64,000 nucleotides of DNA from Ylistrum balloti (Eukaryota): assembly GCF_031769215.1 (NCBI RefSeq), contig NW_026782592.1:496001-560000 (forward strand), in the 5' to 3' direction. The notes below the pieces were generated by a model, which was not told where the DNA came from, made no database searches, and saw nothing but the letters and a program-made list of their open reading frames with translations. A program made the position numbers and the translations under genes. This document shows, piece by piece, positions 740 to 64,000 of the stretch. The first letter of the stretch is position 1, and each line of letters starts with the position of its first letter.

Positions 740-1110
740 AATGATCATTTTGTCCTTGAAAGTCTTTATTTAAGAATATTACAGGACCGTGGTCATGATC
801 AAAGTGAAAAACATCCGATTTCCATCATACAACAAGGAGGTTAATGTGTTGGATATTCATTAGTATATCTGGTGGTTCCGTTCTTGTGAACAAAGCTCCG
901 ATTTGAGAACGTGACATTACTTACTTGGATTGGCCAAAGTTTATATGGCGGGTATCGTCGATGAAGCAGAAGACGCTTACTCTTCCGGACATCTGATCTT
1001 TTTCTCCATATACTCTTTCAGGAGTATCCGTGTAGATCTTACTTTTGTTCATATTTTGCCCTAGTTTTACAGAGTTTGAGTTTGGATTATGATTATGTCG
1101 ACATATTTTC
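740..1110 (+). mobile_element. Penelope-like retroelement 3' relic
   Basis: The reverse complement shares cataatcataatccaaa..caaaatatgaacaaaag..tccggaagagtaagcgtcttctgcttcatcgacga with the copies at 22.4 kb and 57.1 kb. Confidence 0.6.
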
Positions 1111-21558: not shown

Positions 21559-22369
21559 TGTTTTGTATCAGATTGTTTTCGTATCTCATCAGTCCCACTA
21601 CTTTAATAGTTCCCCATCGTGGCGGGGGGTCGTGGTGGAGACTACCTTTTTACGTAACGACCTTTAGTTGTACTAATTGTATTGTAACGTTAAGAATGAC
21701 TAGTATAGGTGACCCTGACAGGAATGTGGTTTGTACTCATTTCCAGTCAGGTAGATGTTGATAATCTTAATTAGACCGAGCTGTGTCATTGTGCATCCAG
21801 CCGAATGTGTCTGTCTCCCAAACAGAGAGATGTATTGGCTGGAATGTTCTGTCGCCATGACCCCATGACTCCGTGGTATTAATGCTTTAACCCGCAGTTA
21901 AGAACAGTTAATGTTTCAAATCGAGTATGGAGACAAAAGACAGTTACGTTGCGTTCTGGTTCACTTCATAAACTGACTGAAATGTTACGACTTTGTTGAA
22001 AAGTGCTGTTCATTTGCAGGGGTTTGTTTATATATCTATATATTTATTCATGTTAAAAAAAGAACTTAATATCGTGTGAAACTACACATTTTTCTATGTT
22101 GCTAAGATCTAAGCATACTTCTAACAGCATGCATTGTAATATTGTTCGCTTACCACGACCTCTAGAAGGTTCAGAACGGAATGGAACGCGTATATCGTAA
22201 TTACTCGTGCTAGTTTTGTGTTCAAAACTCCAGCTCCCCTCCTTTTATTCTTCTTTTTTATTCCTTCTGTTATGTTCGTTTCATCTGTGACGTTTGAATT
22301 CATATTTACTCTTGTACAGACGACACATCTAGGACATAACAAAAAAAACCTCAAGGAATAACCAACGTG

Positions 22370-22870
22370 TCAACATAATTATAATCCAAGCTTAAATTTC
22401 ATAAAACTAAAGCAAAATATGAACCAAAGAAAGATTCCTGAGATAGTACACGGGGAGTAAGACCACTGTTCCGTAAGAGTAAGCGTCATCTGCTTCAGCG
22501 CCAATACCTGCAATGTAAACCTTGGTCAATCCAAGTATATAATGCTACGTTCTCAAAAGAGAACAAGGTATACAACAACGGAACCAACAGGCAAACCAAC
22601 GGGCTTCCAATACGTCCAGCTTTATATCGTACAAAGAAATAGAATAATTATCAATATCACCTTGGCGACCATAAAACTTCCCTGCAATTTCCATCAACCT
22701 GCTTCTTTTGAAACCCTTGTGTTACGAGTTTGTCCGTCAGTTGATGATTTCTTGCACGAAAATCATGACAATAAGAACAGGTCCTTAACACCATTTGTTG
22801 GGGATGCAGGATTTGGCTATCCAGAAATGGTAAATTCACAGTAGGGAAATCAATATCATGAAGTTTACAT
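22370..22870 (-). mobile_element. Penelope-like retroelement relic (RT C-terminus plus 3' flank)
   Basis: Minus strand gives NLPFLDSQI..RTCSYCHDF..QLTDKLVTQGF and, in another frame, KFYGRQ. This matches the VNFPFL..YSRAC..DF..LLTxKLLxQG..KFYGRH motif of Penelope-type RTs. The flank is homologous to 935-1110 and 57050-57185. Confidence 0.75.
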
Positions 22871-53753: not shown

Positions 53754-55270
53754 AGCTATGATAATTCTGTTGATTGTATAAATGTTCCTGTATTATGAAA
53801 AAAATTATAAGCAACTTCTGTAATTTGATTATTGGAAATTCTTATATTTATTTTGAGTTCCTTCCATTTACAGTTTCATGAAAATTTCGTGCCTAAGTTG
53901 TAAATTTATTCTGAAAAATATACAATGTATTAAATGATTTATAACAGGTTGGTAAATATTAATTGATTGTATTTAGATGAAACAATAAGATATATAAACC
54001 CCTATAGGTAATTACTTAATGGTATATAGAATATGATTTTTATCGACATGTACCTGTAATCAGAAGTGCTCATATCCCTGTCTTGTAACCCACTACTCCT
54101 GTCTCAGTCTTAATATCCTTTATTGTACAGTCCTGGTGCCTTGGTTCTAACCAGGGTTTTTAAGTTTTCTAACTGAGTGTATGTTCAAGTCATACTAATG
54201 TAAACATTTTTAATTTGAAAGATATATATTCTTAGTCACAAATCCTTACAGACATAAAGCCATGCAGGTGTTCTGCAAAGTTATTGAGAAAAAGACAAAC
54301 AGAACAGCTTAGGAAAGGTCAAAACTGGTAAAAAAGGATGTTATCTCCGATCTTCATCTTACCTTGATTAATATCATTTGGATGTAATGCTTTATTTTTC
54401 ATATTTAGTTAGTACTTAGAGATTTTTTGTAAGGAAATCATATTTGTGAAAGGTTTAACAATTTTAGAGTTTGCTATCGCATGGCCTTCAAGCCTGAGCG
54501 AATCTGTCATGAAGCAGCAGTCGTCTTCTGTCGAATAATACAGAGGTATAGATCAAACTACACCCAACAGAAATGTGCCAACAATTCAAACCTAGTTTTG
54601 AAACATATAATTATTTTTCTAATATGGAAAATGTATCTAAAGAGCGAAATTGGTCCTACAGATTTGTGTTTCCTTAAAGGAGTTTAGTGATTATAACAAT
54701 ATTTCATATACACTTTCATTACTTTCAGTTTGTGGTCAACTTCAAGAGTTTAAGGAAGCAAGTAATATGAACAAGGGACCTGGACTTAAGGCTTGAGATT
54801 TAACACTCTGCTGCAGAATATTATTTCAGCACACCGTTTTAAAGCTTACTCAAATTCTGTTTAATTTGAATTTTTTCTAGGAATCTTACACATTGATCTT
54901 CTGTTTGACCTGCAAAGGAATTGTTTAACAGACGTATTGATAAATTATAAGCCGGTTCGGTGCCACAGCCAAGTGTTAAGTCTCAGATTGTAATATTGTT
55001 ATGTATAGTGTATAACAGTTTAATATCGTTATGGAGCGAGTTGTAAGTAGTGAGTATCCAGAGAATAATGGTTTTTTTTTTTTTTTTTTTTCATAAATAA
55101 TTCTAGAAATTGTATATTTCTATATCATGTGTTTTAGACCAGTAAAATGGTTGAAATGTAAAAATGTTTTGTTGTATTTCTATGACTGATATATCACCGT
55201 AGTCCAATCAGAGTGATCAATCACTTTAAACTTTACCTGGAATAGTGAAGTTGGATGATTACATGTTTTA

Positions 55271-57049: not shown

Positions 57050-57870
57050 GTCAGCATAATCATCATCCAAAGTCAAATTCAATAAAACTTGGACAAAATA
57101 TGAACAAAAGAAAGATTTGTACGGGGGCGTCTGTTCCGGAAGAGTAGGCGTTCTCTGCTTCATCGACGACAACCGCCATGTGAATTTCTTCTTTCTATCT
57201 GCAATACATATATATTTGAGAGTTCTGAGTTTTTATCACACTTTGGGTCTCGAGAATATCGTAATAATCGGAAACGATAAAAATAGATCGCGCTGCAAAA
57301 CAAGTTCCTCACGGACGAAAGATGACAATCTATAGTCAGTAGATATCTTATTCCAGTTTAAAACCACGGGTCAATACACTCATACTAATCTGAGAGCATG
57401 GACAAACCTGTGTTGAAATTTCCCACACGGATTTATATTTGAAGGAATATATGCAGCATCACTCTACTGAAGAAACATGATTCAATTGGTTGAACGTAGA
57501 TTTATTTAAACGAATTGCTCATACCATTCTCCTTAATGAATAATCGATTGGCCAGAATTCATCCAATGAAAATTTCAGGATCTCTAAAGTCGTGTTCTGG
57601 CGTTTGCCAGGGACGTAAAATACCGTGTTATAAAAGTTTTTATGTTTCCGCTATTCGCGGGAGAGATTTTGAACACTTTCCAAAGTGTTTTATTATTGAT
57701 ACATGTCCTTGTATTTGATTTTCAAATTTTATATCAAGGACCATGTGTAAAATATAGTTGTCTTCGAGTGTTCGTTTCCGGGAGCGTTGTCCCGGTTGGT
57801 TCCTTATGTAAATATCGACGAGTATCTGATAAGGCATATATACCATAAACGACTGATCAATGAATGCTCT
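57050..57870 (-). mobile_element. Penelope-like retroelement relic (two recognisable patches: 57050-57185 and about 57790-57870)
   Basis: Same 3' flank as 935-1110. The minus strand gives YGIY followed, after a frameshift, by LIRYSS (consensus YGVYISQLIRYSR). Confidence 0.55.
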
Positions 57871-57893
57871 ACCCGGATGTCTGTAGAACAGGA

Positions 57894-57998
57894 CACAGGA
57901 ACTTGACGAGAATTCCCGACCCAAGGACAATATATATGTATTACTATATAACACATATATCTGGTCCGTGGGTCGGGAACTCGTGCCAAGTCCCTGTG
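57894..57998. mobile_element. Fold-back (MITE-like) imperfect palindrome
   Basis: Arm 57894-57928 (cacaggaacttgacgagaattcccgacccaaggac) is the near reverse complement of 57964-57998. There is also an inner ATATATGT/ACATATAT stem. Confidence 0.7.
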
Positions 57999-58021
57999 AT
58001 ACAGGACGCGATCATACTGAC

Positions 58022-58056
58022 TATATAATATGCCACTCTTTGTGTGTGCTCACACA
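58022..58056 (+). promoter_or_regulatory. Candidate TATA box (TATATAA, 58022-58028) and initiator near 58052 for the yellow-like gene
   Basis: TATATAA lies 30 nt before a ctcAcac initiator-like motif, which lies 50 nt before the ATG. Motif inference only. Confidence 0.5.
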
Positions 58057-58101
58057 CATCGTTTTGCCGACGTAACTTATTACGCTTCCTGATATTCTGC
58101 C

Positions 58102-59322
58102 ATGACGGCTGTTTGCAGCATTCTCCTGTTCCTGCTGTCGTCGACTGTTTACACTCAAGGCGTATCTTCAGGACAATCACAGATTATCTACCGCTGGAAA
58201 TCACTGGATTACTCGTGGCCAAATGAAACCACGAAACAAAACAGCATAACAAGTAAGAGATTCATAGTCGAAAATAATATCATTTCTGGAATTAAAGTCT
58301 TGGATGAAAACGTTTTCGTGACTGTGCCCAGATGGAAACCAGGCGTTCCATCAACATTGAACAAGGTAGTTACCAACCCGGCGAATCTGGAAGAGAATAT
58401 CTTGGAACCATATCCTGATTGGGAAATGCAGACTTTGGGTGAGTGTGGTGCCTTCCAGTATGTCCAGAGCATGGAAATTGATCCTAATACTGGCTATATG
58501 TGGATAATAGATGTTGGGCGTGTGAATACTCTAACGAACAAGTCACAAAACCTTTGTCCACCGAAGCTGGTCATCTACGACATACGTAATGAAAGACTTG
58601 TTCACGTGCACGAGTTCCCCGATAGTGTTGCGTCATGGACGTCTAATTTTCTGAATGATATTGTTCTAGATTACGTTAACGGTGTCGCATCGTTTGCATA
58701 TATAACAGATTCTTCTGACTCCAAATTAATTGTGTACGATCATAAGAGGAACACGTCTTATTTCTTCACGCATCCGTCAATGGAGATAGAATCAGGCGCG
58801 GACACGATTGTAGTTGGCGACAATAATTTAACAACGAAAGTCCACATCAATGGGATAGCCATGAATTTCGACTTCCGCTTTGTCTACTACTGCGCTTTGA
58901 ATGCCTTCTCATTGTACAGAGTTCCCACCTATGTACTCAGGAATGAATCAGCAGTGTTCATTGTTGAAATGCTTGGCCGAAAAAATGACGTCACTGGTGG
59001 AATGGTGGCAACTGATAAGGCCCTGTATTACGGCGGACTGACTACGAATGCCGTGGATAAGTGGCCATTTACCGAAGCAGGTAATGAAGTAACGGTTATC
59101 TCCAATGAGTCTAGCCTCCGCTGGGTCGATTCCCTGGCCATGGACACGCAACAGTCTCTCTGGCTTGTTGCTAATAGTCTAGATTTATTTCTAGCAGGAA
59201 GAATGAATTTTACAAACACTAATATGTACATTTGGAAATTACCCATTGGAGAAAACGGATATTTGGCATCTGCAAAATCCCGAACAGACACTGCCCTGAA
59301 TGGAGATATGATGATTGGTTAG
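58102..59322 (+). CDS. Yellow/major royal jelly protein (MRJP) family secreted protein, single coding exon, 406 aa
   Basis: Uninterrupted ORF with an N-terminal hydrophobic signal-like segment (MTAVCSILLFLLSSTVYTQG). Family motifs occur in order: WKSLDYSWP, FVTVPRWKPGVPSTL, PYPDW, EIDPNTGYMWIIDVG, CPPKLVIYD, FAYITD, NGIA, WVDSL. Several N-x-S/T sequons. GCC-ATG start context. Confidence 0.95.
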   Translation: MTAVCSILLFLLSSTVYTQGVSSGQSQIIYRWKSLDYSWPNETTKQNSITSKRFIVENNIISGIKVLDENVFVTVPRWKPGVPSTLNKVVTNPANLEENILEPYPDWEMQTLGECGAFQYVQSMEIDPNTGYMWIIDVGRVNTLTNKSQNLCPPKLVIYDIRNERLVHVHEFPDSVASWTSNFLNDIVLDYVNGVASFAYITDSSDSKLIVYDHKRNTSYFFTHPSMEIESGADTIVVGDNNLTTKVHINGIAMNFDFRFVYYCALNAFSLYRVPTYVLRNESAVFIVEMLGRKNDVTGGMVATDKALYYGGLTTNAVDKWPFTEAGNEVTVISNESSLRWVDSLAMDTQQSLWLVANSLDLFLAGRMNFTNTNMYIWKLPIGENGYLASAKSRTDTALNGDMMIG

Positions 59323-59520
59323 GCTGGGATATATATAAGGCTATTTGCTGTTAGTTTATTTGGTGTCCATTTCAAAATGTTTTCATTACAAAGTGATTCA
59401 GATGTCTTTTAAATCAGTCTTTTTTTCACGTCTTAATTCATTCAAATAGTGGCACGGTTCAGAATACATCGTCAACTTGACGTTTTTTGTTCTGTGGTTT
59501 TTTGTTGTTTATTATATTGT

Positions 59521-59526
59521 AATAAA
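59521..59526 (+). terminator. Candidate polyadenylation signal (AATAAA) of the yellow-like gene
   Basis: First AATAAA about 200 nt after the stop codon, preceded by a U-rich tract. Confidence 0.5.
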
Positions 59527-60552
59527 ACATTATTCCACAGCACTGATAGCGTTCTAACACACCGTCTAGCCGGTTTGCTAATTAACAGGTATTGTGACAG
59601 TGAATCCTTGTAGTAATGTGCCAAGTGTGAATTGTATTCGCGTTATCACGAACGGGATCCAAACTGCTGCCAAATCGGTGTCATCAGCGATGTAATGCTT
59701 ACTATTTCTATAACAATGAACAGTATGTACTCAGAATGCAAAATTAAAAACTGCAAATTTATAATTGTGTGGAACAATAATGTTTTTATTCAACATTTTT
59801 TGCTAAATCATCTTTATTCGTAAAAAAAAACTTGTTCACAAGAATACACTATAAGAGAGGAAAATCAACATATGAAAGTATATTACAGTGGTGGGTTTGT
59901 GTGTGTGTGTGTTTTTTTTAAGCGGGGGTACTCTAATTTAATAACAATCTCCCTGCCCCTCTAACCGCATTGTGTTAGTGTTGAGGTACAGAGAAGTGGT
60001 ACGTACTAACGTAAAGCAGAATAATAGAAAGAATTATTGCAAACGGTACCTTGCGATATCTGAAGATAAATAAAAGATCTATAGACCACTATGTTTTTCT
60101 TAAATGAAGACATCATATCATTTAGAAATGAAGAGTCATCATACGTGTTAACAATACAAATTTATACACCACAATGGCTGAAAATACTCTCCGGTATCTG
60201 AATAACAGAATTACATCATTGTCTGAAAAAAGATAACAAAGGACACTCACCATGAAGGAAGGAATGATGAAGAATATATATGTCTTTTTTAGTGGGTGGG
60301 GCGGGGGGGTTACAAACGTAGGCTGTGATTAAAACTCGTATATCAGCATTTGAAAATGTATTTATATGAAATATATTTATATAGTAAATATTTAGTATAG
60401 AGTACCTGTTGATCGAAGACAAAAAAACAGCTAAACTTTTAATGATCGAACTCAACCATAACATAATGAATAAGAAATTAAACACTATCAAAGGTTTTTT
60501 TTAACAATGGAGAGAATGTGAATTAACAATAAATTAATACATACTGCAGATA

Positions 60553-60905: not shown

Positions 60906-62029
60906 GTTTTTCCTATCTTTTATTGATATCAATAAAGCAAAAATACATAAACACATAAGTCAAGCACATACATCTTACCAAAACATTTATGAAATATAAA
61001 ACAAAAGATACTTGTTTTTAAATGTCCAGCTCAATGCAGAAAAAAATGGATAAAGACGAAACATATATTTCATTTTACTTTTGATTCTAATCAATGGGTT
61101 CTCAATAAAGAAATATTTCACAAAGTTTTCGCCTATCTTAAGATGTTTTGATTGTTTATCAAAGTTAATATATTGATCTGAAGTCTAAATTATTTTTTCT
61201 TTGTTATGAAAAATGGTAGCATGTAGTCTTCCGCTTTACATTCTGAATCGACCCATCTCATCAAAACGTCAAAGGATTCAAGCATTAACTGTATATCAGG
61301 GATACCTAAACTTTTCTTTTATCAGTAACTGTGCCGTAATTAATCAGATGAACATTATTCCATTAAAAAATTCCAATACATATATCTTTTTATTTCATTT
61401 TATAGTATACTTTGACAATAACAATATCCTAATGGCAGTTGCTCTGCCTTGTATTGTTAACATTTTTTGGCAACCGCAAATTCAAAATAGATTACATTGG
61501 TTTCAACTTTGCATCCCAACCTAGTGTAATGCAAAGTTTTACACTCTCTCGACAAAAATTCCAAGAACACATGTAACTTCTTTTCTAATTCCAACACCTA
61601 ATTTGTCTTTTTTCAGAATGCCGTTGTAGCAGCATAACAAATGACTTATCCCGTTTTATTATTAATTAATTAATTACCTATCAATTATAGCTCCAAAATC
61701 CTTATACTTCTAACAATTCAGAAACCTTTCCAGAATATTTACCTGAAAATGTAAGATTAGTATTATCAGCGTGTTAAAATACAATAGTTTTAATGATAAA
61801 ATTACATGGGATTATAATGCAACCTGTTGCAGGGCGTGTATTGTATCCCATAACAGCAAACTTCTTCAGAACTGCTTTCATTTAGCATTCCTTGGCAAAT
61901 GAATGCCCACGGGATAAGTGCAAATTCAACATGAAACGCGTCATGCTAAATGAATGCAGTTAAATGTTTTATTTATACATAATTTTCAATGTTCGCCTTG
62001 TTATAAGGGGCGAAACCTCGATTTATTTT

Positions 62030-64000
62030 ACCTTACTTGTGATATTCCTACGCCAGTGGCAGTTTATGAGCTGGTAATACACAATATACTTCAAAGTTAC
62101 ACCTACAGATGATGTTCTGCTATCGGTGACATCCCTTGTGTGTAGCATGTCACTGGTGTCTTTCCGCCGTGAAGCCTCTGATTTCGTCATCAGGTGGTAT
62201 CCAGTTCTCGTCAAATGTTTCTATACTCTGCAGCCCACCTCCACTGGGAATATCTATACAGTCCATCCCCTCTCTCTGCACTTTGCCATTAGCTCGCCAT
62301 ACTTCGTTTTCTTCCTTTCATGGGCCTCCTCGCAACATTCTTCCCATGGCACTGTTAGCTCTATTGCGATGAGTTTATACTTCCTTTTCCCTCTTTAACC
62401 CTGTCTGACAAACCGAATAGCAGAATGTCCGTCTTTCCGTCTACAGGATATCAGACAGTACTCTCAGTATATTGCCATGCCTCCATCGGTATCTTCCTTG
62501 CTGAAGTGCCTTCTTGCATCCAGACAGAATGTGAGACATTGACTTTCTCTGGTTGCATAGCCTGCAGATCGGGTCATCCGTCATTCCCCACTGGTGCAGA
62601 TTGGCCTACGGTGGGAAAATGTTATGAACGTATCTTAGAGTAAATGGTTCCATCCTCCACCATTCCGCCCATGTAAGCTTTCTCTCCGGTAGTTTCCATG
62701 TGGCCCATGTATTCAGCTTACTCAGTTCAACAGATTCCTGATTTGGTCTCTCCTCTTCTGCTCTCCGTACCTCCGTATGAACCATCTGCCGTCGCTCCTG
62801 AGTGTTTGTCCTTTCCCACTGCTGGATGTGTGAACAGCCAACACCTTGCCTTCCAACACATGTATTACCAATTGTGATCCTCAGCTCCAGCATACTCTAT
62901 GCTTCCCCTATAGCAGTTGCTGCAGACCACTCCCGTCCTTGTCTGTATCCCTGCATCATTGATCTTTGGAGTCCCGCACTGTCATTACAAGCTTGCACTT
63001 TGACACTTTGTGCTCCTCGTCGACTCCCGTTAGCGGCAATTGTAGTTCAGTAGAGCGTGCATACAGACCGATATCTGTAAAGTTTGGCGGGACCCCTAGA
63101 TACCTGTTCGCCACATTCCCTGAAGACCCCACTCTCATCGTCGGGCTCTCATACAGCAACAGCAACCATGTCAGTCTCGGTAGCATGCCATGCTGGTACA
63201 TCCAAGCCTTATACTTTCCTCTCCATCCATTAGTGTACGTGGACCAGGGTGTCCTTTTGGTTCTGACCATCCTTGACCTTTAGTGTGAACTGTTGGCTGA
63301 ATCAAGTAACGAAATTTCCGAATTTTAAACTGCATCCTTGCCCATGAACCCACCTCCTCCAGCGCAGTCAGCACCCATCTGGCTTGTACATGCGTTTTGG
63401 TTGTGACGGTAAGGTCATCGATGAACCTTCGGTTGGCTGGATGGTAGACACCAGACTCTATTCTTGGTCCTCTGATTTCCTTCTCCGCAGCCTTTATAGC
63501 GAGGTTCATTCCCATGAAAATTAGTGTTATAGTGCATCCTCTCACTATCCCTTTCTCCAGATCTATCCACTTTGTAGGGCATTCCCTAAATGCGAATCTC
63601 ATCTGCATCCCTCCGAAGAAGTCCATTATTGTTTCCTACCGTCTTAGGACATGATAATGCTCTAAGGTCACCTCAATCAACTTGTGTCGGGCTGACCCAT
63701 AAGCGTTGGCAAGATCCAACCAGACTACCGTCTGGTTATCTCTGCTTTTCTTGGCTTCCCTGATCAGTTAACCAATTGCACTTGTATGCTCTATACATCC
63801 AGAGAGCCCAGGAAAACTTCCCTTCTGGACTGAGGTGTCGACGTAGCTGTTCTCCACCATGTAGGATGTCACCCGCCTAGCGAAGGTGGAAAAGAAAATC
63901 TTTCCCTCAACGCTCAGCAAAGAGATGGTCCTAAACTGGTTTTTCTCCATTGTGGTAAAGACTCCCTCCGCTATTTTCCAACATGGCGGTATAATCCCTT
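62030..64000 (-). mobile_element. RLE-type non-LTR retrotransposon (HERO-like, R2/NeSL-related group), degenerate, continues beyond the window
   Basis: WKIAEG..QFRTISLLSVEGKIFF, SVQKG..PGLSGCIEH, VVWLDLANAYGS, GIVRGCTI, RFIDDL (RT); CRLC..SHILSGC..LQQGRYRWRH (CCHC knuckle); IELTVPWEE..HERKKTKY..FPVEVGCR (restriction-like endonuclease). Stops and frameshifts present. Clade assignment is from remembered motifs. Confidence 0.88.

What the first reader, a model, noticed from the sequence alone, without database searches (positions are those of the whole stretch)
58022..59526. Intact, intronless Yellow/MRJP gene in an apparent bivalve genome
Seen: a 406-aa uninterrupted ORF with a signal-like N-terminus and all main Yellow/MRJP motifs. 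It includes the Cys after PYPxW and the CPPKL Cys seen in insect Yellow proteins, and the whole unit from TATA to polyA signal is about 1.5 kb with no intron. The neighbouring gene has 27 introns. Established: the family is expanded in insects, common in bacteria and patchy in other eukaryotes. Characterised members include dopachrome-conversion enzymes (Drosophila yellow-f/f2) and amine-binding sandfly salivary proteins. Inference: this could be an old horizontal acquisition or a retrocopy that was domesticated. It may supply a secreted melanin/DOPA-chemistry function for shell colour, periostracum, byssus or immunity, which I do not know to be characterised in molluscs.
Basis: partly seen in the sequence, partly recalled or inferred. 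Interest (0 to 1): 0.75.

Follow-up and report, generated by a model that had tools for sequence, protein, structure and literature searches.

The report
Ordinary scallop yellow/MRJP gene, already described
This is a real, intact, single-exon gene for a secreted Yellow/MRJP-type propeller protein in a scallop genome, but the same intronless gene family was described across molluscs in 2019, so it is an ordinary inherited family member and not a new horizontal acquisition.

Summary
Window 58102-59322 (+) is an uninterrupted 406-aa ORF. It matches Pfam MRJP (PF03022) at 143 bits, and its model (pLDDT 93.9) is closest to Aedes dopachrome-conversion enzyme, bee MRJP1 and sandfly LJM11.

The gene sits in host DNA: three DNA runs from two studies carry it intact at single-copy depth, and the locus is collinear with Mizuhopecten yessoensis. 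Its nearest relatives are scallop 'protein yellow-like' genes (60-74% identity; clade support 100/99). Relatives at 36-48% occur in other bivalves, gastropods, chitons and an annelid.

Every relative's coding sequence I checked is also a single exon (nine complete, two partial). The lack of introns is therefore a family trait and not a sign of a recent retrocopy or transfer. dN/dS is 0.14-0.23.

Rosani et al. [quoted passage not shown]

Function is still untested. Only one of five LJM11 amine-cage aromatics is kept. No RNA run was found, so expression remains open.

Verdict: already known, low interest.

The parts
58102..59322 (+). Single-exon coding sequence of a 406-aa Yellow/MRJP-family protein (stop codon included)
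   Evidence: ORF list and sequence; Pfam PF03022 at 143 bits; AF2 model pLDDT 93.9 with best fold match Aedes DCE 9w1k, TM 0.81-0.83; intact in three other DNA runs with 8 SNPs and no indels
58102..58161 (+). Probable signal peptide (residues 1-20, cleavage after T-Q-G inferred)
   Evidence: Hydrophobic core, mean Kyte-Doolittle 1.9 over residues 5-17; low-pLDDT N-terminal helix 2-18 ahead of the propeller. Heuristic only.
58022..58029 (+). TATA-like motif 73 nt upstream of the ATG (candidate core promoter, unverified)
   Evidence: Read directly from the sequence. No transcript data. The upstream region is not conserved with M. yessoensis at blastn level.
59521..59526 (+). AATAAA candidate polyadenylation signal 199 nt after the stop (unverified)
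   Evidence: Read directly from the sequence. No RNA run was found.

Best explanation
This is a vertically inherited member of the lophotrochozoan DCE/yellow (MRJP-domain) gene family in a scallop genome. It belongs to a scallop-specific group of duplicates and is the positional orthologue of a M. yessoensis 'protein yellow-like' gene. Its single-exon coding sequence is the normal state for this family in molluscs and annelids, and is no mark of a recent retrocopy or transfer. The product is most likely a secreted, N-glycosylated (seven sequons), soluble six-bladed beta-propeller of about 43.6 kDa with one conserved disulphide (C115-C152, inferred). It is kept under purifying selection. By analogy with insect Yellow-f/f2 and Aedes DCE, I infer that it acts outside the cell on small catechol, quinone or indole compounds held in the propeller's central pocket, such as dopachrome-type melanin intermediates. 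That step is inferred and not shown, because the pocket residues differ from those of insect DCE and of the amine-binding LJM11. I put about 0.35 on dopachrome-type chemistry specifically.
For: Family and fold: Pfam MRJP at 143 bits. PDB sequence hits are MRJP1 1.6e-25, Aedes DCE 1.2e-22, LJM11 2.8e-14 and Ava_4197 2.5e-8. The AF2 model has pLDDT 93.9 and pTM 0.90, and Foldseek ranks 9w1k, 5yyl/7asd, 3q6k and 2qe8 first, with TM 0.65-0.83.
Host gene, not contamination: a 2389-nt unitig spans 57082-59462 in three DNA runs from two studies. Its depth (19/33/10) matches the flanking contigs (14-17/28-30/8-10), and breaks occur only at high-copy repeats. Four same-order blastn blocks link the locus to the M. 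yessoensis locus.
Vertical inheritance: 298 homologues were found. The best are scallop proteins at 60-74% identity, then other bivalves, gastropods, a chiton and an annelid at 36-48%. The window protein nests in a Pectinidae-only clade with support 100/99; the inner 6-row set has 100/98.
Intronless across the family: the coding sequence is contiguous in M. yessoensis P0003, P. maximus P0002, P0005 and P0045, Sinanodonta P0015, Haliotis P0011, Liolophura P0038, Owenia P0069 and Mya P0019. Two partly visible tandem neighbours also show no intron.
Selection: pairwise dN/dS is 0.14-0.23 against the M. yessoensis and P. maximus relatives. The ORF is intact in other individuals, with 4 synonymous and 4 conservative changes.
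Against: Expression is not shown. No RNA run holding the gene was found, so promoter, transcript ends and tissue are unknown. dS is about 1, near saturation, so the dN/dS values are rough. Deep branching among mollusc clades is unresolved in the careful tree, so vertical descent is firmly shown only within scallops and is inferred from distribution above that level. For dopachrome-type chemistry, the residues aligned to the Tyr-Arg pair of Aedes DCE and Drosophila Yellow are Gln122-Ser123. Only one of the five LJM11 cage aromatics is kept, as W341. PMC6678240 likewise found low pocket conservation in octopus and lancelet proteins.
Confidence: 0.85

Rival explanations
1. The whole animal Yellow/MRJP family began with one ancient transfer from bacteria into an early animal (the Ferguson et al. 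proposal). The intronless coding sequence of this gene and its lophotrochozoan relatives would be a relic of that event. This concerns the family's origin and is compatible with the best explanation for this gene.
For: The coding sequence is single-exon in all 11 lophotrochozoan copies checked. The scallop protein shares the N185-D186, Y-I-T/S-D203 and W341-x-D343 motifs with cyanobacterial Ava_4197 (2qe8); bee MRJP1 lacks the first and third of these and Aedes DCE the first. PMC6678240 discusses the hypothesis and leaves it open.
Against: No close bacterial relative turned up. A scan of 185,579 bacterial and archaeal genomes with the clade's best-conserved motif gave one partial match, on a 2.5-kb MAG contig. 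The metagenome hits that JGI labels 'lactonase YvrE' sit alone on AT-rich 3.3-3.4-kb contigs with empty flanks over 1 kb on at least one side, which looks eukaryotic. The profile scores insect proteins far above the bacterial one (8e-59 and 2e-47 against 1e-16). PMC6678240 favours presence in the protostome-deuterostome ancestor followed by losses. I built no tree that includes bacteria.
Confidence: 0.3
2. It is a recent retrocopy of an intron-bearing parent gene that was later put to use.
For: The coding sequence has no intron, the unit is compact at about 1.5 kb, and it lies beside an intron-rich gene.
Against: No intron-bearing relative was found among the 11 copies checked. The same gene sits at the collinear position in M. 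yessoensis, with dS about 1, so it predates that split. There is no poly(A) tract after the AATAAA and no flanking direct repeats; the only direct repeats in 56.5-60.5 kb are two short chance-level pairs.
Confidence: 0.03
3. It is a recent horizontal transfer into this scallop, or contaminant or misassembled DNA.
For: GC is locally higher than the surroundings, 0.43 against about 0.35, as expected for any coding exon.
Against: Read depth matches the flanks in three runs from two studies, and contigs break only at host high-copy repeats. The locus is collinear with M. yessoensis. The nearest relatives are all scallop genes.
Confidence: 0.01
4. The protein is not a dopachrome-converting enzyme. 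It is either a ligand-binding or structural secreted protein, like MRJPs or sandfly salivary Yellow proteins, or an enzyme of another kind that uses the conserved polar and acidic pocket.
For: Positions aligned to the DCE and Drosophila Yellow Tyr-Arg pair are Gln-Ser. E125, N185, D186, D203 and D343 are invariant or nearly so across 79 lophotrochozoan, collembolan and foraminiferan relatives. Most insect Yellow proteins have no shown enzyme activity (established knowledge; PMC6678240).
Against: The LJM11-type amine cage is not kept (1 of 5 aromatics), so amine binding of the sandfly kind is unlikely. The best structural match is the Aedes DCE. The catalytic residues of DCE were not available to me in any readable paper, so the pocket comparison is incomplete and rests on sequence alignment alone.
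Confidence: 0.45

Closest known systems
Lophotrochozoan DCE/yellow genes (Rosani et al. 2019, Genes 10:495, PMC6678240); nearest members are M. yessoensis, P. maximus and A. irradians 'protein yellow-like'
   Same: Same family and same clade, at 60-74% identity. Shares the single MRJP domain with a signal peptide, the intronless coding sequence and the multi-copy status in scallops. The locus is collinear with M. yessoensis P0003.
   Different: Nothing of substance: it is the copy from another scallop species. This species has a single copy at a locus where P. maximus has three in tandem. I found every sampled paralogue intronless, whereas the paper reports 2-5 introns in the non-conserved copies.
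Aedes aegypti dopachrome conversion enzyme (PDB 9w1k) and Drosophila Yellow-f/f2
   Same: Same fold, and the best structural match: TM 0.81-0.83, sequence E=1.2e-22. Both are secreted.
   Different: About 22% identity. The C115 and C152 cysteines are absent in Aedes DCE. The DCE Tyr-Arg-Pro-Arg stretch is Gln-Ser-Met-Glu here. Activity is untested.
Apis mellifera MRJP1 (PDB 5yyl, 7asd)
   Same: Best sequence match among solved structures: 1.6e-25 for the single sequence, 8e-59 for the profile. It shares both conserved cysteines and the PYPDW motif.
   Different: MRJP1 is a bee-specific nutritional and oligomer-forming protein. It lacks the N-D and W-x-D motifs conserved in the mollusc clade.
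Lutzomyia longipalpis LJM11 (PDB 3q6k), an amine-binding salivary Yellow protein
   Same: Six-bladed propeller of the same family, TM 0.70-0.78.
   Different: The serotonin cage residues Tyr90, Phe178, Phe223, Phe325 and Phe344 align to Gln122, Ser204, Asn250, Trp341 and Leu360, so only one aromatic is kept. Gln91 aligns to Ser123.
Anabaena variabilis Ava_4197 (PDB 2qe8), a bacterial MRJP-like 'putative hydrolase'
   Same: Same fold (TM 0.65-0.77). It shares the P-K-L, N-D, Y-I-S/T-D and W-x-D motifs.
   Different: About 20% identity. It lacks the N-terminal extension of roughly 120 residues and the cysteine pair. Its function is unknown.

Membership tests
Yellow/MRJP family (Pfam PF03022) | Significant match to the MRJP profile over most of its length | tested here: met
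   143.1 bits against a cut-off of 19.8, E=1.5e-41, profile positions 7-278 of 288
Yellow/MRJP family (Pfam PF03022) | Six-bladed beta-propeller fold like MRJP1, LJM11 and DCE | tested here: met
   AF2 pLDDT 93.9, pTM 0.90. The top Foldseek hits are 9w1k, 7asd/5yyl, 3q6k and 2qe8, with TM 0.65-0.83.
Yellow/MRJP family (Pfam PF03022) | N-terminal secretion signal | tested here: met
   Hydrophobic residues 5-17 and a T-Q-G motif before residue 21; low-confidence helix 2-18 in the model. Heuristic only; no dedicated predictor was available.
Yellow/MRJP family (Pfam PF03022) | Conserved cysteine pair (after PYPxW, and in CxPKL) | tested here: met
   C115 and C152 are invariant in 79 relatives and aligned with MRJP1 cysteines. 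The disulphide itself is inferred.
Lophotrochozoan intronless DCE/yellow lineage (Rosani et al. 2019) | Single-exon coding sequence and grouping with mollusc DCE/yellow proteins | tested here: met
   Uninterrupted ORF. It nests in a scallop clade with 100/99 support, inside a lophotrochozoan clade with 99/97 support. Relatives' coding sequences are contiguous.
Dopachrome-converting enzymes (functional class; Yellow-f/f2, Aedes DCE) | Catalytic conversion of dopachrome to 5,6-dihydroxyindole, and the residues responsible | not testable with these tools
Aligned pocket positions differ (Tyr-Arg becomes Gln-Ser).
Amine-binding salivary Yellow proteins (LJM11 type) | Aromatic cage plus Gln and Asp lining the ligand pocket | tested here: not met
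   1 of 5 aromatics is kept (W341). Gln91 aligns to Ser123. Asp328 aligns to Ser344, with the invariant D343 one position away. This rests on sequence alignment only.
Processed retrocopy | Intron-bearing parent gene, poly(A) remnant, target-site duplications, lineage-specific insertion | tested here: not met
   All relatives checked are intronless. There is no A-tract after the AATAAA and no flanking direct repeats. The position is shared with M. yessoensis.
Recently transferred foreign gene | Nearest relatives outside the host's lineage; absent from sister taxa | tested here: not met
   The nearest relatives are scallop genes, followed by other molluscs. Host-level read depth and synteny agree.

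The most novel reading that the evidence does not exclude
Lophotrochozoan Yellow proteins, this one included, may not be dopachrome-converting enzymes at all. They keep an ancestral pocket that is polar and acidic (Q122, S123, E125, N185, D186, D203, W341, D343) and is partly shared with the cyanobacterial Ava_4197 protein. The characterised insect DCE, MRJP1 and LJM11 have each replaced part of this set. That would point to a different, still unknown chemistry. Within scallops, this copy's subclade would be a soluble derivative of an ancestor tethered by a hydrophobic C-terminal tail, which the sister subclade P0007-P0009 still carries.
Probability: 0.3. Interest if true: 0.45.

Novelty: already known. 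Interest (0 to 1): 0.12.

Why it matters
It matters little as a discovery. [quoted passage not shown] The useful results here are negative ones for the scan:
- The gene is not contamination, not a recent transfer and not a retrocopy.
- The single-exon coding sequence applies to every sampled copy from bivalves, a gastropod, a chiton and an annelid.

What stays open, and is worth a bench test, is the biochemical activity of any mollusc Yellow protein. The ligand-pocket residues known from insect members are mostly not conserved.

Tried and rejected
1. Hidden C-terminal exon or stop-codon read-through. Several distant relatives end, like this protein, in two hydrophobic residues plus Gly exactly where others continue into a hydrophobic tail. 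I checked for a donor site at the final Gly codon and for a conserved reading frame after the stop. Post-stop sequences are unrelated among three scallops, the stop codons differ, and Mya uses GGC-TGA, which has no GT donor. Rejected.

2. Close bacterial relatives. It returned only one partial hit on a 2.5-kb MAG contig, so it says little about distant bacterial homologues. Metagenome hits named 'lactonase YvrE' proved to lie on gene-poor, AT-rich contigs.

3. Expression. The one run search returned only DNA or unclassified runs. Run X6 has three short contigs confined to 58073-59721. That could hint at RNA, but the run was selected through this gene and its type is only a guess, so it is inconclusive.

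4. DCE catalytic residues. Two literature searches found no paper on the 9w1k structure.

5. Species name. A search for the assembly accession in papers gave nothing.

6. Other checks. Earlier scan notes held nothing near this place or under these words. Rfam found nothing in 49-64 kb. ORFs in the GC-richer 62-64 kb stretch had no Pfam hit.

7. Searches not run. I did not run the large representative-protein search or a second word search. The protein was not left open, and the family's deep origin is a published, unresolved question.

Full report
**Observation.**
The window holds an uninterrupted ORF at 58102-59322 on the + strand, ATG to TAG, 406 aa. Both are motifs only. The window has no N runs, and this is the only MRJP-like copy in it or in the next 10 kb.

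**Family and fold.**
- Pfam MRJP (PF03022) matches at 143 bits, E=1.5e-41, over profile positions 7-278 of 288. NCBIfam, which holds bacterial and archaeal naming models, gives nothing.
- Against solved structures, the sequence hits bee MRJP1 (1.6e-25), a dopachrome conversion enzyme (1.2e-22), sandfly LJM11 (2.8e-14) and cyanobacterial Ava_4197 (2.5e-8).
- An AlphaFold2 model built on 79 relatives is confident, with mean pLDDT 93.9 and pTM 0.90.
- Foldseek ranks Aedes aegypti DCE 9w1k first (TM 0.81-0.83), then MRJP1, LJM11 and Ava_4197. Unrelated propellers follow only after those.
- The N-terminus is hydrophobic, and there are seven N-x-S/T sequons. The mature protein would be about 43.6 kDa with pI 4.9.
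- C115 and C152 are invariant in 79 relatives. They align with MRJP1 cysteines but not with Aedes DCE.

**Is it host DNA?**
The window is NCBI assembly GCA_031769215.1, contig JAUZWB010001137.1 (819,536 bp), positions 496001-560000. I could not obtain the species name.

In three DNA runs from two studies, one 2389-nt unitig covers 57082-59462. That is 1 kb of upstream sequence, the whole ORF and 140 nt beyond it. Its depth is 19, 33 and 10, matching the flanking contigs at 14-17, 28-30 and 8-10. Contigs break only at two high-copy repeats, at 57056-57187 and 59427-59466, and they overlap there by unitig-length words.

The other individuals carry eight substitutions in the ORF and no indel. Four are synonymous and four are conservative: N146D, E164D, D234E and M368I. 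The locus is collinear with the M. yessoensis locus of P0003 through four same-order blocks, including one at the start of the downstream Tom7 gene. Upstream on the same strand lies a multi-exon ankyrin-repeat gene. Contamination and misjoin are therefore rejected.

**Relatives.**
The word search found 298 homologues.
- The best are 'protein yellow-like' entries of Pecten maximus, Mizuhopecten yessoensis, Argopecten irradians and Ylistrum balloti, at 60-74% identity.
- Next come Haliotis, unionids, Mya, Mactra, Mercenaria, Ruditapes, Mytilus, many gastropods and the chiton Liolophura, at 36-48%.
- The annelid Owenia, the foraminiferan Reticulomyxa and collembolans follow at 38-40%.

In a careful maximum-likelihood tree of 43 sequences, the window protein lies in a Pectinidae-only clade of ten (100/99). 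Inside that, it sits in a six-member set (100/98). All lophotrochozoan sequences are separated from Reticulomyxa and Collembola at 99/97. Relations among the mollusc clades themselves are unresolved. The quick 70-sequence tree agrees on the scallop clades. Scallops also hold several further paralogue clades.

**Intron status.**
Gene length equals three times (protein length + 1) for these eight:
- M. yessoensis P0003
- P. maximus P0002, P0005 and the distant paralogue P0045
- Sinanodonta P0015
- Haliotis P0011
- Liolophura P0038
- Owenia P0069

The Mya P0019 coding sequence is one contiguous tblastn block, although its gene model spans 48.5 kb. Two partly visible tandem neighbours also show no intron. 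The intronless coding sequence is therefore a family-wide state in Lophotrochozoa.

There is no poly(A) remnant or target-site duplication, and the position is shared with a species at dS of about 1. Together these reject a recent retrocopy. None was found, but the vertical pattern is there all the same. What falls is the idea that this gene is a separate acquisition.

**Selection.**
Pairwise dN/dS against the M. yessoensis and P. maximus relatives is 0.14-0.23 by two methods, with dS about 1.0-1.3, so the values are rough. Between the two P. maximus tandem copies it is 0.29-0.34.

**Prior knowledge.**
Rosani et al. 2019 (PMC6678240) traced DCE/yellow genes through Metazoa and reported the following:
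- clusters in M. yessoensis, Lingula and Haliotis, with 11 genes in M. yessoensis;
- three bivalve clades;
- active but often low expression;
- poor conservation of pocket residues in non-insect members.

They favour an origin before the protostome-deuterostome split followed by losses. They leave Ferguson's bacterial-transfer proposal unresolved. I found no paper testing the activity of a mollusc Yellow protein.

**Mechanism.**
Shown: family membership, fold, and an intact gene under constraint. Supported by heuristics only: secretion.

Inferred: action on small catechol, quinone or indole compounds in the propeller pocket. Using the profile alignment to LJM11 and the residue list in PMC6678240, the mapping is:

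| LJM11 residue | Window residue |
|---|---|
| Tyr90 | Gln122 |
| Phe178 | Ser204 |
| Phe223 | Asn250 |
| Phe325 | Trp341 |
| Phe344 | Leu360 |
| Gln91 | Ser123 |
| Asp328 | Ser344 (next to invariant Asp343) |

Sandfly-type amine binding is therefore unlikely. Aedes DCE has Tyr-Arg-Pro-Arg where the mollusc clade has Gln-Ser-Met-Glu. The clade's conserved N-D, Y-I-T-D and W-x-D motifs are all shared with Ava_4197, whereas MRJP1 lacks the first and third and Aedes DCE the first. This keeps open a chemistry different from insect DCE. I could not inspect the model's coordinates, so whether these residues cluster in the pocket is untested.

**Bacterial relatives.**
It returned only a partial 36% match on a 2.5-kb contig of a proteobacterial MAG. 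Two metagenome hits carry the gene alone on AT-rich 3.3-3.4-kb contigs with empty flanks over 1 kb on at least one side, which looks eukaryotic. This is weak evidence against a close bacterial donor. It says nothing about distant ones.

**Expression.**
The run search found no RNA run, so expression, transcript ends and any untranslated-region intron remain untested.

**Verdict.**
The interpretation as an unusual acquisition is not. The gene is an ordinary, already described kind of mollusc gene whose biochemical role is still unknown.

Noticed in passing
window 54962-55178: A block of about 215 nt, roughly 3 kb upstream of the yellow gene, is 84% identical overall to the collinear position in M. 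yessoensis (L002:5169-5369), with a long nearly identical core. Coding dS between the two species is about 1. It is single-copy in the window and has no Rfam hit. It may be a conserved non-coding element.
   Followed up: partly
window 57894-57998: A near-perfect palindrome (two 50-nt arms, 82% complementary, 5 nt apart) ends 24 nt before the TATA-like motif. Read depth in that bin is about ten times single-copy, so it looks like a MITE-like repeat inside the presumed promoter.
   Followed up: partly
window 57056-57187 and 59427-59466: Two short, very high-copy repeats flank the gene unit, at summed contig depth of about 8,000-39,000 and 850-2,600 against a single-copy depth of 10-33. They are where short-read contigs break. 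The first has partial copies at window 937-1097 and 22363-22519.
   Followed up: partly
L009:3001-4281 (Owenia fusiformis, P0069): An annelid carries an intact single-exon MRJP gene that is 39% identical to the scallop protein. Rosani et al. 2019 reported the family absent from Annelida.
   Followed up: partly
C-termini of P0001-P0006, P0010 versus P0007-P0009 (and P0015, P0038, P0045, P0069, P0027): The family has two C-terminal types. Many members end in a hydrophobic tail of 20-25 residues, possibly a GPI signal or membrane anchor. This gene, most of its scallop subclade, Mya, Lymnaea and Biomphalaria stop after two hydrophobic residues plus Gly, at the point where that tail begins. No hidden exon or read-through was found.
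   Followed up: yes
L004:3001-51570 (Mya arenaria, P0019): The deposited gene model spans 48.5 kb and overlaps a neighbouring IIGP-type GTPase gene. The whole 416-aa coding sequence, however, is contiguous at L004:6583-7830, so the model probably has a spurious or UTR-only extension.
   Followed up: partly
L010:1501-1983 (MAG 'Proteobacteria bacterium' CoA8_C15.2, 2.5-kb contig): This is the only hit in the bacterial and archaeal genome collection. It is a partial match (residues 30-142, 36% identity) stretched over 483 nt, with no single long ORF. It may be eukaryotic DNA binned into a MAG.
   Followed up: partly
window 62000-64000: GC rises to 0.47-0.48 with strong negative GC skew, and there are many overlapping ORFs of 60-150 aa on both strands. 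The three minus-strand ORFs tested had no Pfam hit. It may be a decayed mobile element.
   Followed up: partly
L003:1-11386 (Pecten maximus): P. maximus has three tandem intronless copies (P0006, P0005, P0002) where this species and M. yessoensis show one. This is a lineage-specific tandem expansion.
   Followed up: partly
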